Below are positions 11,907 through 21,953 of a stretch of 64,000 nt of DNA, in pieces. The notes below the pieces were generated by a model, which was not told the origin of the DNA, searched no databases, and was given only the letters and a program-made list of their open reading frames with translations. A program made the translations under genes and the position numbers. Numbering within the stretch: position 1 is the first letter of the stretch; each line of letters opens with the position of its first letter. The stretch spans positions 186,001 through 250,000 of IMG/VR virus record IMGVR_UViG_3300020165_000007. One strand, given 5' to 3'.

Positions 11907-12482
11907 ATGATTTTTACTGAGTTATCACACGCACATATCACCTTTGTAATAGGTTTACCAGGTAGTGGTAAAAGTTACCTATTAAATTACCTAAAAGAAA
12001 ACCCTTTTATCGAACCTGTCGTTTATGATGATTGGTTAATAGTATACGAAAATGATTGTGGTAATGAAAATTTTAATTGTGACAGTAGATATCCTGAATT
12101 AATAGAAAACTTGAATAATAAGATACCTTGTATTATTTCTTCTATTAAGTTTTTGGAGCCTGAATTTTTAAATAGTTCCATAACCACATTAATTGAAGAA
12201 ATTAATGATTTAAAAATAGAATATTTATACTTTGATAATGACATAGAATCATGTAAGTTTAATGTGAAATGTAGAGATATTGAGTTGGGTGGTTATTGGA
12301 AACCTAATAATGAAGGAATTTTATGGTATTATGGTACTATATATAATAATAAACCTTTATATCTATCTGAGTTATCTAATATTGAGAATCTGTCATCCAC
12401 TTATGAAATTCCTACAAAATATACTCCGATAAAGATTGAACGTAATAAGAATATAACGAAATTACCTTTTGGATATGAATAA
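11907..12482 (+). CDS. P-loop NTPase/kinase (AAA_33-like)
   Basis: VIGLPGSGKS Walker A, VYDD. Confidence 0.65.
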   Translation: MIFTELSHAHITFVIGLPGSGKSYLLNYLKENPFIEPVVYDDWLIVYENDCGNENFNCDSRYPELIENLNNKIPCIISSIKFLEPEFLNSSITTLIEEINDLKIEYLYFDNDIESCKFNVKCRDIELGGYWKPNNEGILWYYGTIYNNKPLYLSELSNIENLSSTYEIPTKYTPIKIERNKNITKLPFGYE

Positions 12483-12846
12483 AATAAAATCTCTAACTTT
12501 ATTAACTTTTCTTTTAATTTGTAATCTATCTTATTCCCAATATTGGTTGGATAGTTTAGATATAAAACCTATTTATGTCCCTAACGCGATTACCTTAGAT
12601 AATGATAACATTAATGATGGGTGGAGAGCTGAAAGTTGTGTAGAGTGGGATGATTATGAGGTTATGATATTTAACTGTTGGGGTGAATGTATTTGGTATA
12701 GTAAAGATATAGAGGAGTGGTGGATTGGTGATAAGGTTAAGAGTGGTACCCACTTTTCAAAAGACGGGTTATATACATATAAAATACAGGCTCGTAAAGG
12801 TTTTGAAACCACGGTTAAGGAAGGAGTAATTTATGTAATAAGATAA
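12475..12846 (+). CDS. Signal peptide plus stand-alone T9SS type-B C-terminal sorting domain (CHU_C/gliding-motility CTD)
   Basis: YVPNAITLDNDNINDGW...IFNCWGECIW...WWIG...GLYTYKI...G.I..IR. Confidence 0.8.
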   Translation: MNKIKSLTLLTFLLICNLSYSQYWLDSLDIKPIYVPNAITLDNDNINDGWRAESCVEWDDYEVMIFNCWGECIWYSKDIEEWWIGDKVKSGTHFSKDGLYTYKIQARKGFETTVKEGVIYVIR

Positions 12847-13016
12847 TGGATTTATACGAAACAATACAAGACTCATTTACATTATCTTTAATAGTATGTT
12901 CCTCTTCGATTTCACTAGCAGCAGTTGTCTTATTAATGGTGTGGTTATTTGTTAGAAATAAAGATGAATATTACAAAGACGGTGTAAAAGTAGAGTTATT
13001 TGAGGATTCTCATTAA
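12846..13016 (+). CDS. Small membrane protein (56 aa)
   Basis: TAATG coupled to upstream stop; central TM. Confidence 0.55.
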   Translation: MDLYETIQDSFTLSLIVCSSSISLAAVVLLMVWLFVRNKDEYYKDGVKVELFEDSH

Positions 13017-13074: not shown

Positions 13075-13701
13075 ATGGAAGATAATCTATCAGAGAAGTA
13101 TAACGAGTCACAAAGGATTAAACTGTTGTTTGACGGTTTGTTCTTTAACAAGATGGGATTGCCTTGTGATGTAGTGTATCTACCATCCATTTTTCAACAT
13201 TTGGTTGTTGTAAATATTGATTTATCTAAGATGTATCCATCTCTTGGTGGGAACCCTGATACGATTGAAGAACTCAAGAAAGGTAGGTTTCATAGGGACT
13301 TAACTAATTCTTTGAGATATATTGATGTTCTACCTATGGATGTTTATCCATATCCTGTGTTCTCTCTCGATAAAAAAGGTTTTGATGATTTGGATAATAT
13401 TAGAGATGGTGTGTTGAAATCTTATGAAGAAGTGAAAGATGAGATTGGTCATTGTCTAACTGAGGTCGATGTTGAATGGGTTCCTGATTTGGATACTATT
13501 TTAGGTAGGGACACAGTGGATGCAATCGATGAGTATATACTTAGTTTAGATGATGATATATCATTAGCCTTCAAACCATATTTATATTTCATGTATGGTC
13601 AGGGTAAGTGTGATGATATGAGTTTACCGTCAGCATATAAAGTATTTGACGATATCAACCCTGATATAAAATACATGAGACCTGAAAGAATTAAGAAATG
13701 A
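13075..13701 (+). CDS. Hypothetical protein, paralogous family with 11145 and 15530 genes
   Basis: VNIDLSKMYP...LRYID; TATTTAT 13063-13069. Confidence 0.7.
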   Translation: MEDNLSEKYNESQRIKLLFDGLFFNKMGLPCDVVYLPSIFQHLVVVNIDLSKMYPSLGGNPDTIEELKKGRFHRDLTNSLRYIDVLPMDVYPYPVFSLDKKGFDDLDNIRDGVLKSYEEVKDEIGHCLTEVDVEWVPDLDTILGRDTVDAIDEYILSLDDDISLAFKPYLYFMYGQGKCDDMSLPSAYKVFDDINPDIKYMRPERIKK

Positions 13702-20226: not shown

Positions 20227-20919
20227 ATGGAAAAAGAACTTAAACAATTAAAAGTGGTACTAAATATGTTCCAAAAGTTTATGGAACTTAATAAGTGTAG
20301 TGTTGCGAGTTTTGACGTAGATGCTTATAACTTGCAATTACAATCAGGAAATAAATTTTATTGCAATAGTCAGTGGACAAATTCACCCATACCTATTGAT
20401 AAATTTATTGAAGATTTTATGGACGTTTTAAAAGGTAATAATGAATTAGATACTTGGGTTAACCTTCCTGGAGGTGGTGACGCCGAGATATATAACTATA
20501 CTTTTGAGATTAATCCTGAGGAGCGTATGGTAAGAATATATGGGGATTATAGTTACTATACCGAGGGTGAACAAAACAATAATGTATATGATGCTGACGT
20601 ATTACCTGAAGAAATTATTGAATTTTTAAATAAATTAAGTGAGGAAGGTCACGGTGAATTGGAGGTAGATTTCCAAGGTTCAGGTGATAGTGGTTGGCTA
20701 GAGGAAGATGGTAGAACAAGGAGAGATGACCATTATAAAATACCTGAGGTCGTAGAAAACTATTGTTATGAACTTTTAAAACAATATCCAGGTTGGGAAA
20801 TTAATGAAGGTTCTCAAGGTAATTTTTATTTTGATTCCTCAAAAATGATAGTTTCTTTTGAATTCCAATATAATGAAGAGGTTAGTGAGAGAGAATTAAT
20901 GTATCAGTTCAAATATTAA
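20227..20919 (+). CDS. DUF6878-like protein
   Basis: VDFQGSGDSG and GWEINEGSQG motifs. Confidence 0.6.
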   Translation: MEKELKQLKVVLNMFQKFMELNKCSVASFDVDAYNLQLQSGNKFYCNSQWTNSPIPIDKFIEDFMDVLKGNNELDTWVNLPGGGDAEIYNYTFEINPEERMVRIYGDYSYYTEGEQNNNVYDADVLPEEIIEFLNKLSEEGHGELEVDFQGSGDSGWLEEDGRTRRDDHYKIPEVVENYCYELLKQYPGWEINEGSQGNFYFDSSKMIVSFEFQYNEEVSERELMYQFKY

Positions 20920-21953
20920 TTACTTAATGGTGCCTTAATCGTTGGGTGTGATTCGTAGTTAATGATTTTATAATCAAACTCACCATTTAAAATGTCTTGT
21001 TCAATAAGATGAATCTTAGGTAATTTAAAAGGTTTTCTTTTAATTTGTTCTTTAGCCTGTTCTATATGGTTATTATATAAATGAACATCACCTAAGTTAC
21101 CAATCAAATCACCAGGGACCATACCAACTTCATCGGCAATAATTTCTAATAACATCGCATAAGACGCGATATTGAAAGGTAATCCTAAAAAGGTATCCAC
21201 ACTCCTTTGGTTCCACATAAGTGAAATCTCACGTCTTGGAATACCGTATACGTCCATATGTTCATGGAAGTAGTCATTAGAACGACTCATAGGATTTACC
21301 CCTTCATTATAAATGTCAATTCTCTCATCTAAATTCAATTCTCTTGTGTATACTTGAAAACCATAATGACATGGAGGTAATACCATTTTATCAATATCAC
21401 CTGGATTCCATGCGTTAACCATAAGTCTTCTTGAATCAGGATTATCTTTAACCTGCTCTATCAAATTCCTTATTTGGTCAACAGAAGACTTAACGTTTGG
21501 GAATCCCTCTTTATCGGTTAGTTGGTGGTCGTACTTATCCCACTTCTTCCATTGTTTACCGTAAACAGGGCCTAACTCCCCATACAAATCCGCAAAACTA
21601 TCATCAGTTTTAATGTTTTCTATAAATTCTTCCATAGACACATAATCGACATCCGTTACTAATAAGTTCATGAGTTTATAATTCTTATAAGCATCTCCGT
21701 TCCATATCTTACAATTATTTTCAACTAAGTAACGAATATTTGTATCTCCTTTTAAAAACCATTTAAGTTCTGTCATAAGTGATTTAATCGCCATCTTCTT
21801 AGTTGTAAGAAGAGGAAACCCATCTCTCATTTTATGACGTATAGAATAACCGAAGATTGACTTAGTACCTGTACCTGTTCTATCTTTTTTTTCTACACCA
21901 TATTCCAATATGGTCATCAAAAGTTCTTGATATTGTTTATCTAATTTATTCAT
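20916..21953 (-). CDS. thyA: Thymidylate synthase
   Basis: DRTGTGT, FPLLTTKK, LGPVYGKQW, LPPCH, QRSVDTFLGLPFNIASY, GDVHLY. Confidence 0.97.
   Translation of the reverse strand: MNKLDKQYQELLMTILEYGVEKKDRTGTGTKSIFGYSIRHKMRDGFPLLTTKKMAIKSLMTELKWFLKGDTNIRYLVENNCKIWNGDAYKNYKLMNLLVTDVDYVSMEEFIENIKTDDSFADLYGELGPVYGKQWKKWDKYDHQLTDKEGFPNVKSSVDQIRNLIEQVKDNPDSRRLMVNAWNPGDIDKMVLPPCHYGFQVYTRELNLDERIDIYNEGVNPMSRSNDYFHEHMDVYGIPRREISLMWNQRSVDTFLGLPFNIASYAMLLEIIADEVGMVPGDLIGNLGDVHLYNNHIEQAKEQIKRKPFKLPKIHLIEQDILNGEFDYKIINYESHPTIKAPLSN

What the first reader, a model, noticed from the sequence alone, without database searches (positions are those of the whole stretch)
12475..12846. Phage-encoded stand-alone T9SS type-B sorting domain with no cargo
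Seen: a signal peptide followed within about 10 aa by a complete CHU_C-type CTD. Known: type-B CTDs route SprB-like adhesins through T9SS with PorP/SprF partners, and gliding/T9SS components influence phage susceptibility in Flavobacterium. Inference: a decoy substrate that jams adhesin secretion, causing superinfection exclusion or motility shut-off.
Basis: partly seen in the sequence, partly recalled or inferred. Interest (0 to 1): 0.65.

Follow-up and report, generated by a model that had tools for sequence, protein, structure and literature searches.

The report
Phage cargo-less T9SS type-B sorting domain
A 270-kb phage of Bacteroidota carries a small, conserved gene that encodes only an export signal plus a type IX secretion "address tag" with nothing attached, most likely to occupy the carrier proteins that put adhesins on the host surface.

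Summary
Window 12475-12846 (+) encodes a 123-aa protein. It has a Sec signal peptide (residues 1-21, cleavage SYS|Q), a 12-residue linker and a full-length CHU_C / type-B T9SS C-terminal domain (Pfam 52.7 bits, cut-off 27, profile 2-86 of 86). NCBIfam TIGR04131 stays below its cut-off (24.5 against 35).

The window lies in a 270,383-bp IMG/VR virus record with tail-fibre, baseplate, RNR and DnaB genes. The gene is real: syntenic orthologues give dN/dS of 0.17-0.23. It belongs to a family of at least 12 clusters of 111-123-aa "signal peptide + CTD only" proteins, and every context examined is phage-like. In Flavobacteriales genomes the domain sits almost always at the end of long proteins.

New context: about 50 kb away the same phage encodes a PorP/SprF shuttle homologue (155 bits) and a 998-aa type-B cargo, in a module conserved in its relatives.

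The decoy idea is plausible but untested. A complex prediction of the small protein with the phage PorP gave only weak support (0.43; best control 0.00). Other complete jumbo phages carry such minimal CTDs without any PorP, so host shuttles are possible targets.

Verdict: a new variant of a known kind, with the mechanism inferred.

The parts
12475..12846 (+). Gene for the 123-aa protein P0001 (stop included): signal peptide, short linker and a CHU_C type-B CTD, with no cargo.
   Evidence: Orthologues at 64-87% identity have the same architecture. dN/dS is 0.17-0.23.
12475..12537 (+). Sec/SPI signal peptide, residues 1-21 (MNKIKSLTLLTFLLICNLSYS). Predicted cleavage comes before Q22, matching the Bacteroidota Q-rule.
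   Evidence: Sequence. Q22 is invariant in 21 family members. All family N-termini are hydrophobic. AF2 gives helix 3-27. The Q-rule is described in PMC5837995. Cys16 is not conserved, so a lipoprotein is unlikely.
12538..12573 (+). 12-residue mature N-terminal linker (QYWLDSLDIKPI), the only sequence outside the domain.
   Evidence: pLDDT dips to 57 over residues 21-30.
12574..12837 (+). CHU_C / type-B T9SS C-terminal domain, residues 34-121, a beta-sandwich.
   Evidence: Pfam 52.7 bits, profile 2-86 of 86. TIGR04131 scores 24.5, below its cut-off of 35. P0001 keeps all invariant or near-invariant positions of a 48-sequence CTD alignment: P36, D44, N47, D48, W69, G70, W83, G85, Y100, G117, R123. 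The model has pLDDT 86.4. The PDB sequence match is to the C-terminus of GhpA, 9flp.
11907..12482 (+). Upstream 191-aa P-loop (GLPGSGKS) protein. Its stop overlaps the CTD gene's start (ATGAATAA). The same neighbour is present in the orthologous loci.
   Evidence: Only weak AAA_18/AAA_22 hits and PHROG 'ATPase' at 22 bits. Synteny is seen in L015, L016 and L017.
12846..13016 (+). Downstream 56-aa ORF with one predicted membrane helix. Its start overlaps the CTD gene's stop (TAATG). Conserved in close orthologous loci only.
   Evidence: The ORF in the same position at the distant family locus L110 is not homologous.
13075..13701 (+). 208-aa ORF of unknown function, the next member of the same-strand gene run. 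Syntenic in L015.
   Evidence: No Pfam or PHROG hit.

Best explanation
P0001 is a minimal, cargo-less substrate of the host's type IX secretion system, made by a jumbo phage of Bacteroidota (probably Flavobacteriales).

Shown: it has a Bacteroidota-style Sec signal peptide (Gln at +1) and a complete type-B CTD and nothing else. It is under purifying selection. It belongs to a phage-borne family of such proteins.

Inferred from work on the family (PMC12618676, PMC9143113, PMC12635249): after Sec export the CTD is recognised by the T9SS translocon and handed to a PorP/SprF-type outer-membrane shuttle. There type-B CTDs stay bound and uncleaved. Because nothing is attached to the CTD, the product is a 'blank' shuttle.

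Most likely consequence (inference): it competes with the type-B adhesins that normally load onto those shuttles, namely SprB-like proteins, which are motility adhesins and thought to be phage receptors. This would remodel the infected cell's surface through receptor loss, superinfection exclusion or arrest of gliding. Alternatively it may tune loading of the phage's own PorP/SprF shuttle, which serves the phage's 998-aa type-B cargo.
For: - Architecture.
- Phage origin.
- Purifying selection: dN/dS 0.17-0.23 against orthologues in the same four-gene synteny.
- Family: the ten best hits among 1.84 billion representatives are all 116-122-aa signal peptide + CTD proteins aligned end to end. The signal peptides and the Q at the cleavage site are conserved.
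- All six further contexts are phage-like: contigs of up to 255 kb, and per the cluster listing up to 270 kb, with ThyA, ligase, NUMOD3, amidase and runs of short ORFs.
- A separate complete jumbo phage has its own 111-aa version.
- In bacteria the domain sits at the end of long proteins. Three Flavobacteriales genomes gave 109 hits; of their three short open frames, the two examined (the third was not checked) were frameshift pieces of long genes. Of the best 150 matches in 301 genomes, 4 lie in open frames under 170 aa, and none aligns from the signal-peptide end of the profile.
- The same phage encodes a PorP/SprF homologue (155 bits) that keeps the invariant C-tail Cys.
- Complex prediction of phage PorP(20-323) with P0001(22-123): ipSAE 0.43 (runs 0.45, 0.40, 0.43), best of 3 controls 0.00, verdict 'weak support'. 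The mark was reached by 58 of 80 solved complexes and 2 of 110 mismatched pairs. At 0.60 or under it was reached by only 7 of those 80 and by both passing mismatches. Runs agree in at least 70% of contacts and the partner's pLDDT is at least 68.
- Literature: the CTD is sufficient for secretion and needs a cognate shuttle (PMC12618676). The CTD stays uncleaved and bound to PorP/SprF (PMC9143113). SprB and RemA are thought to be phage receptors and T9SS mutants are phage-resistant (PMC9804748).
Against: - No experiment and no expression data.
- TIGR04131 is below its cut-off.
- The gene is not next to a PorP/SprF gene, as cognate pairs usually are. The phage PorP lies about 50 kb away, beside the 998-aa cargo, which is its more obvious partner.
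- The P0001 CTD is only 35% identical to that cargo's CTD and is not its sister in the tree. Sharing the same shuttle is therefore not indicated.
- The complex score is weak by the tool's own calibration, and such a pass may reflect family likeness only.
- Type-B pairing is specific (PMC12618676), so a single small CTD may block only one shuttle.
- The host is unknown, so no host shuttle could be tested.
- One natural variant (L015) lacks 11 residues in the first CTD motif.
Confidence: 0.4

Rival explanations
1. It is a dedicated partner of the phage's own PorP/SprF shuttle, not a decoy for host shuttles. It would act as a second, minimal substrate or 'cap' that stabilises or regulates the phage shuttle, which carries the 998-aa phage cargo to the host surface.
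For: The phage PorP/SprF and the 998-aa CHU_C cargo form a module conserved in relatives. The complex prediction of phage PorP with P0001 reached the mark, but weakly: 0.43 against controls of 0.00, verdict 'weak support'.
Against: Complete jumbo phages G004-G007 have no PorP/SprF yet carry small CHU_C proteins. G005 has a 111-aa stand-alone one. The gene is 50 kb from the PorP module. CTD identity to the 998-aa cargo is only 35%. No co-occurrence statistics could be obtained, because the related records are fragments.
Confidence: 0.2
2. The CHU_C beta-sandwich is used here as a generic Ig-like binding module in the periplasm or outer membrane, unrelated to T9SS routing. It might, for example, inhibit or bind a host envelope protein.
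For: Foldseek finds only generic Ig-like, FN3 or PKD-like folds at weak E-values. TIGR04131 is below its cut-off. There is no adjacent shuttle gene. Other phage proteins that follow the Q-rule are proposed simply to modify the envelope (PMC10367356).
Against: The full-length Pfam match exceeds the gathering score. All conserved CTD positions are retained, including the terminal G-x-I-x-x-x-R. The domain sits at the extreme C-terminus, as a T9SS signal must. The family's nearest relatives are bona fide C-terminal CTDs of long secreted proteins.
Confidence: 0.2
3. It is surface-displayed as a product in its own right, a minimal surface tag anchored on a shuttle. The exposed face or the pyroglutamyl N-terminal stub would have a function such as masking. 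Competition would not be the point.
For: The same routing logic as the best explanation applies (PMC9143113, PMC12618676). Phages also encode a graded series of CHU_C proteins of about 190, 400-590 and about 1000 aa, which clearly carry cargo.
Against: Only 12 non-domain residues exist, and they are poorly conserved across the family.
Confidence: 0.12
4. It is a decaying remnant of a longer type-B substrate gene, or an ORF-calling artefact.
For: Short CHU_C open frames in a bacterial MAG turned out to be frameshift pieces of long genes.
Against: Here the ORF has its own start and signal peptide, and it is translationally coupled to its neighbours. dN/dS is 0.17-0.23. Length and architecture are conserved in at least 12 clusters down to about 30% identity. 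14 of 19 stand-alone CTDs cluster together in a quick tree, SH-aLRT 81.
Confidence: 0.03

Closest known systems
Type-B CTD substrates of the T9SS (SprB and Fjoh_3952 of Flavobacterium johnsoniae; PG1035 of Porphyromonas gingivalis)
   Same: N-terminal Sec signal peptide. C-terminal CHU_C / type-B domain with the conserved positions. Expected dependence on a PorP/SprF-type shuttle, to which the uncleaved CTD stays bound (PMC12618676, PMC9143113).
   Different: The known members carry a large passenger: PG1035 is about 50 kDa and SprB is very large. P0001 has none, only 12 residues before the domain. It is encoded by a phage and is not adjacent to a shuttle gene. TIGR04131 scores below its cut-off.
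sfGFP-CTD reporter fusions used to define type-B signals (Kulkarni 2019, cited in PMC12618676; Paillat 2025, PMC12618676)
   Same: These fusions show that roughly the last 100 residues are a self-contained signal that needs co-produced cognate shuttle. P0001 amounts to a natural 'CTD-only' construct.
   Different: The reporters are artificial and carry GFP. No natural cargo-less version is described in the papers retrieved.
Phage-encoded type-A CTD cargo proteins ('Cryophage', PMC7468147)
   Same: A phage of Bacteroidota encodes proteins tagged for the host T9SS. The authors propose surface remodelling or superinfection effects.
   Different: Those carry type-A CTDs fused to enzymes (endoglucanase, GH39, PA14). 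Here the CTD is type-B with no cargo, and the phage also brings its own shuttle. No type-A CTD is present in this phage.
GhpA grappling-hook protein of Aureispira (PDB 9flp)
   Same: The only solved-structure entry whose sequence matches the family profile, at its C-terminal type-B CTD (E 6e-5).
   Different: A 5898-aa bacterial surface filament. Only the terminal domain is related.

Membership tests
T9SS type-B CTD (Pfam CHU_C PF13585) | Match to the Pfam model above the gathering score, over the full length. | tested here: met
   52.7 bits against 27; residues 34-121 cover profile 2-86 of 86. The six-frame search of the genome gives the same result.
T9SS type-B CTD (NCBIfam TIGR04131 Bac_Flav_CTERM) | Match above NCBIfam's curated cut-off. 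| tested here: not met
   24.5 bits against a cut-off of 35, E 2.3e-5, profile 3-74 of 85. It is a divergent member by this model.
T9SS type-B CTD substrates | The domain lies at the extreme C-terminus of the protein. | tested here: met
   The domain ends at residue 121 of 123, and the terminal ...GVIYVIR aligns with the family's terminal G-x-I-x-x-x-R.
T9SS type-B CTD substrates | [quoted passage not shown] | tested here: met
   The n-, h- and c-regions and SYS|Q are visible in the sequence. Gln +1 is invariant in 21 members. No dedicated predictor was available.
T9SS type-B CTD substrates | The conserved sequence motifs of the last ~100 residues (motifs A-E of PMC12618676) are retained. | tested here: inconclusive
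   P0001 keeps every invariant or near-invariant column of a 48-sequence CTD alignment. The exact motif definitions are in a figure that is not held, so a one-to-one check was not possible.
T9SS type-B CTD substrates | A passenger (cargo) region lies between the signal peptide and the CTD. | tested here: not met
   Only 12 residues. This is the feature that sets the family apart.
T9SS type-B CTD substrates | A cognate PorP/SprF-like shuttle gene is adjacent or in the same genome. | tested here: inconclusive
   Not adjacent. A PorP/SprF homologue (155 bits) exists about 50 kb away, beside a 998-aa type-B cargo. Orphan substrates are known (PMC12618676). Predicted binding has only weak support: 0.43 against controls of 0.00.
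T9SS type-B CTD substrates | T9SS-dependent secretion and surface anchorage on the shuttle. | not testable with these tools
   This needs expression in a T9SS host with T9SS-null controls.
Bacteroidota SPI substrates (Q-rule) | Gln immediately after the signal-peptide cleavage site. | tested here: met
   Q22 is invariant in the family. The rule is described in PMC5837995.

The most novel reading that the evidence does not exclude
Jumbo phages of Flavobacteriales carry a toolkit for taking over the host's T9SS and gliding surface. Its parts would be a phage PorP/SprF shuttle that keeps the C-tail cysteine used to couple shuttles to the GldK track, a large phage adhesin-like type-B cargo, and a cargo-less CTD that acts as a competitive inhibitor of host shuttles. 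Together these would replace host adhesins (phage receptors) with phage proteins during infection. This would be the first natural protein inhibitor of type-B T9SS sorting and a new class of superinfection-exclusion or host-takeover factor.
Probability: 0.2. Interest if true: 0.85.

Novelty: new variant of a known kind. Interest (0 to 1): 0.66.

Why it matters
- Type-B sorting is the least understood branch of the T9SS. How CTDs are matched to PorP/SprF shuttles, and how shuttles couple to the gliding track, is only now being worked out.
- A natural, 102-residue, CTD-only protein is a ready-made minimal probe, and possibly an inhibitor, for that step.
- It would also be a concrete example of how phages of Bacteroidota manipulate a surface machinery that doubles as their receptor.
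- The gene family, together with the phage-encoded PorP/SprF plus cargo module, shows that phages do not merely use T9SS-dependent receptors but encode T9SS parts themselves.
- No homologue of this phage's PorP/SprF was found among 50,697 deposited phage genomes, and P0001 gave only two weak matches there, in uncultured huge phages. None of the three proteins matches any PHROG family. None of the papers retrieved links these domains to phages.

Tried and rejected
- Close-relative scan of IMG/VR with P0001 alone found nothing. The alignment-based scan worked.
- The first genome-contig scan, with the phage PorP, found nothing.
- 'relatives' is not available for a virus record, and 'of' needs a G handle.
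- The Bacteroidota -7 promoter motif TANNTTTG is not enriched in the window (78 found against 96 expected) and is absent upstream of the operon.
- The sigma-70 and terminator scan showed nothing above shuffles, so no expression class could be assigned.
- Neighbouring genes gave no informative Pfam or PHROG hits.
- The ESM Atlas gave nothing for the 998-aa cargo.
- Foldseek against the PDB gave no hit at E <= 1e-3, only generic Ig-like folds. These include type-A CTD chains 8glk_D and 8gl8_D, the RgpB CTD, PorZ and PorU.
- The small ORF that follows a distant family member (L110) is not homologous to the window's 56-aa membrane ORF, so no conserved two-gene cassette exists beyond the close orthologues.
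- Lipoprotein reading (Cys16): rejected, because the Cys is not conserved while Gln22 is.
- Short bacterial CHU_C open frames in G003: of three, the two examined are frameshift pieces of long genes and the third was not examined.
- Recent truncation of the phage's own 998-aa gene: rejected. Identity is 35% and the two are not sisters in the quick tree. The careful tree search did not finish, so only the quick tree with SH-aLRT support was used.
- Complex prediction: 'weak support' only. It is reported as such and not taken as proof of binding.

Full report
**1. What is at the coordinates**

The + strand holds an ORF from ATG 12475 to the TAA ending at 12846, encoding 123 aa (P0001). A TTG two codons upstream is possible, but the orthologues begin MNKIK.

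Pfam CHU_C ('Type IX secretion signal domain', PF13585) matches residues 34-121 over profile positions 2-86 of 86, at 52.7 bits against a gathering score of 27. NCBIfam TIGR04131 ('T9SS type B sorting domain') matches at 24.5 bits, below its cut-off of 35.

Residues 1-21 (MNKIKSLTLLTFLLICNLSYS) have the n-, h- and c-regions of a signal peptidase I substrate, followed by Gln22. An AlphaFold2 model built on 48 aligned CTDs has mean pLDDT 86.4. It shows an N-terminal helix (3-27) and a beta-sandwich over residues 32-122. Only 12 residues separate the cleavage site from the domain.

**2. The replicon is a jumbo phage**

The window is positions 186001-250000 of a 270,383-bp IMG/VR virus record with a CheckV completeness of 88%. 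The record is about 30% G+C and carries no tRNA in the window. About 94% of it is covered by ORFs in a crude call.

PHROG matches include:
- tail fibre (176 bits)
- baseplate wedge
- both ribonucleotide reductase subunits
- a DnaB-like helicase
- thymidylate synthase

No near-identical record exists among 50,697 GenBank phage genomes.

**3. The gene is real and conserved**

A word-based search found five relatives of 112-146 aa at 64-87% identity, all with the same architecture. Three of their contigs show the same gene order:
- a 191-aa P-loop protein whose stop overlaps the start (ATGAATAA)
- the CTD gene
- a 56-aa single-helix ORF whose start overlaps the stop (TAATG)
- a 208-aa ORF

Nei-Gojobori dN/dS between the window gene and these orthologues is 0.17-0.23, with dS of 0.3-1.5. 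That indicates purifying selection, not decay.

**4. It belongs to a wider family of cargo-less CTDs carried by phages**

An exhaustive phmmer search of 1.84 billion cluster representatives gave 4044 hits at E <= 1e-3. The ten best (E 5e-34 to 4e-16, 33-54% identity) are all 116-122-aa proteins aligned to P0001 from the signal peptide to the last residue. Two more, P0164 and P0196, follow further down the list. Other short hits lack a signal peptide and begin inside upstream domains, so they are gene fragments.

In the 21-member alignment the Gln after the signal peptide is invariant, while Cys16 is not. This fits the Bacteroidota 'Q-rule' for SPI substrates (PMC5837995), argues against a lipoprotein, and points to a Bacteroidota host. 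Phage proteins that obey this rule have been noted before (PMC10367356).

These clusters have many members, and the cluster listing reports contigs of up to 270 kb. All six further genomic contexts inspected are phage-like. They are long runs of short unannotated ORFs with ThyA, DNA ligase, a NUMOD3 homing endonuclease, PD-(D/E)XK nuclease, amidase or ClpB-like genes, on contigs of 20-255 kb. A different, complete (CheckV 100%) 293,850-bp jumbo phage has its own 111-aa version, L191:2913-3248.

In a quick maximum-likelihood tree of 92 CTDs, 14 of the 19 stand-alone CTDs form one cluster (SH-aLRT 81). The other five are placed elsewhere on long or unresolved branches. One main lineage is therefore likely, and repeated origin is not excluded. 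The careful tree search did not finish.

**5. In bacteria the domain is a tail of long proteins**

Three Flavobacteriales genomes gave 109 CHU_C matches. Three of these lay in open frames of 122-194 aa. The two that were inspected are frameshift pieces of long genes in a high-GC long-read MAG, each directly followed by a PorP/SprF gene; the third was not inspected.

With the family profile, 293 of 301 Flavobacteriales genomes have matches. Of the 150 best matches, 146 lie in open frames of 230-2083 aa. Four lie in frames under 170 aa, which were not inspected. None aligns from the signal-peptide end of the profile. I write 'not found in those searched', not 'absent'.

**6.

The same phage genome has a second CHU_C protein of 998 aa (62 bits; G000:C1:137649-140645, + strand). 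It also has a 323-aa PorP/SprF family outer-membrane protein (PF11751, 155 bits against a cut-off of 22.3; C1:147458-148432, - strand).

The two genes flank five unannotated ORFs of 211, 468, 618, 603 and 226 aa. The whole block is syntenic in related metagenomic contigs. The PorP gene and the long CHU_C gene also lie 5-8 kb apart in four IMG/VR fragments.

The phage PorP has a clade of its own: about 25 clusters at 55-80% identity, on contigs of up to 301 kb. Identity then drops to 39% or less for Flavobacteriales and other Bacteroidota proteins. It keeps the C-tail cysteine that is invariant in the bacterial homologues aligned (VPSCSF against IPCPxF). In SprF, C-tail cysteines form the disulfide link to the GldK gliding track (PMC12635249).

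No PorP/SprF homologue was found by tblastn in 50,697 GenBank phage records. Only eight were found in IMG/VR. PHROGs v4 has no family for P0001, the 998-aa protein or the PorP. The phage has no type-A CTD.

Phage-encoded CHU_C proteins as such are not rare in IMG/VR. 230 contigs were confirmed as encoding a relative. In the best 80 loci, most are 400-590-aa secreted proteins, and a class of about 190 aa occurs on jumbo genomes. The cargo-less form is thus the extreme of a series.

**7. Mechanism**

Established for the family:
- A type-B CTD of about 100 residues is necessary and sufficient for T9SS export when the cognate PorP/SprF-like shuttle is present.
- Pairs are specific, with some crosstalk.
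- The shuttle decides the final destination, either the moving gliding track or a static anchor (PMC12618676).
- The CTD is not cleaved, and the substrate stays bound to PorP or SprF at the surface (PMC9143113).
- Without SprF, SprB is not exported (PMC12635249).
- In F. johnsoniae, SprB and RemA are thought to be phage receptors, and T9SS or gliding mutants of flavobacteria are broadly phage-resistant (PMC9804748).

A protein that is only signal peptide plus CTD should therefore be exported, threaded to a shuttle and left sitting on it. It would consume shuttle capacity, and perhaps translocon capacity, without delivering anything.

Which shuttle it targets is open. For the phage's own PorP, one complex prediction (PorP 20-323 with P0001 22-123, own alignments) gave ipSAE 0.43 (runs 0.45, 0.40, 0.43) against a best control of 0.00, with the tool's verdict 'weak support'. 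The mark was reached by 58 of 80 solved complexes and 2 of 110 mismatched pairs. At 0.60 or under it was reached by only 7 of those 80 and by both passing mismatches. The runs agree in at least 70% of their contacts, and the partner's pLDDT is at least 68. Such a pass may reflect family likeness only.

Three points argue against an obligatory phage partner:
- Four 91-100% complete jumbo phages with small CHU_C proteins have no PorP/SprF at all.
- The obvious partner of the phage PorP is the neighbouring 998-aa cargo.
- P0001's CTD is only 35% identical to that cargo's CTD.

I therefore rate 'occupies PorP/SprF-type shuttles, most likely those of the host, and thereby alters display of type-B adhesins' at about 0.4, and 'dedicated partner of the phage shuttle' at about 0.2. 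The downstream phenotype (exclusion, motility arrest) is inference only.

**8. Comparison and novelty**

By Pfam, by position and by its signal peptide, the protein is a member of the type-B CTD family. By NCBIfam's stricter model it is a divergent one. It fails the usual architectural feature of having a passenger, and it is not adjacent to a shuttle gene.

The nearest described precedent for phage use of the T9SS is 'Cryophage', which encodes type-A-tagged enzymes (PMC7468147). None of the papers retrieved describes a phage-encoded type-B CTD, a cargo-less CTD or a phage PorP/SprF. The library lacks most subscription journals, so this is not proof of absence.

I class it as a new variant of a known kind. 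The host is unknown, and no expression or binding data exist.

Noticed in passing
Outside the window: G000:C1:137649-148432 (L004:1649-12432): A conserved phage module. A 998-aa signal-peptide + cargo + CHU_C protein lies convergent with five unannotated ORFs and a 323-aa PorP/SprF homologue (155 bits) that keeps the invariant C-tail Cys. The module is syntenic in L018-L020, and the PorP gene and the long CHU_C gene lie 5-8 kb apart in IMG/VR fragments G308-G311. There is no PorP/SprF homologue in 50,697 GenBank phage records and no PHROG family.
   Followed up: partly
IMG/VR loci L111-L190: 230 viral contigs encode CHU_C proteins. Most of the best 80 are 400-590-aa secreted proteins with mature N-termini of the form '..AQ|CDLE..'. 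A class of about 190 aa sits on jumbo genomes of 185-483 kb. Phage-borne type-B T9SS substrates appear to be common but undescribed.
   Followed up: partly
L191:2913-3248 (G005:C1:270913-271248): An independent 111-aa signal peptide + CHU_C-only gene in a complete 293,850-bp jumbo phage that has no PorP/SprF. It sits on a very long branch in the CTD tree.
   Followed up: partly
L015:774-1112: The closest orthologue lacks 11 residues (the INDGWRAESC region) inside the first conserved CTD motif, and its C-terminal ~70 residues are identical to P0001's. This natural deletion variant could be inactive or could show that the loop is dispensable.
   Followed up: no
L108:631-5105: In another phage-like contig, a family member lies about 3 kb from a 1021-aa CHU_C protein and an M43/reprolysin-like metallopeptidase.
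   Followed up: no
G000:C1:128523-130544 and L104:8922-10934: A ClpB-like double-AAA+ protein (673 aa) is encoded by this phage. A 670-aa counterpart lies near the small CTD gene in a related jumbo contig.
   Followed up: no
G000:C1:48695-53452: A 1585-aa phage protein contains an OmpA-like peptidoglycan-binding domain (34.6 bits). A 474-aa protein at C1:133538-134962, near the CHU_C/PorP module, has only a sub-threshold OmpA hit, so no PorE-like partner can be claimed.
   Followed up: partly
L101 and L102 (G003): In a high-GC Flavobacteriales MAG, long type-B substrate genes are broken by frameshifts just before the CTD, which gives spurious 'stand-alone' CHU_C ORFs. Each is directly followed by a PorP/SprF gene. 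This is a caution for surveys of short CTD proteins.
   Followed up: yes
window 20916-21953 (-): A phage thymidylate synthase (PHROG 160, 353 bits). In a related jumbo contig (L104) the small CTD gene lies immediately downstream of ThyA.
   Followed up: no
phages records LR745206.1:27691-27963 and LR756502.1:519109-519324: The only tblastn matches to P0001 in GenBank phage records are weak CHU_C-like stretches in two uncultured huge phages of 634-642 kb. Neither record is annotated.
   Followed up: no
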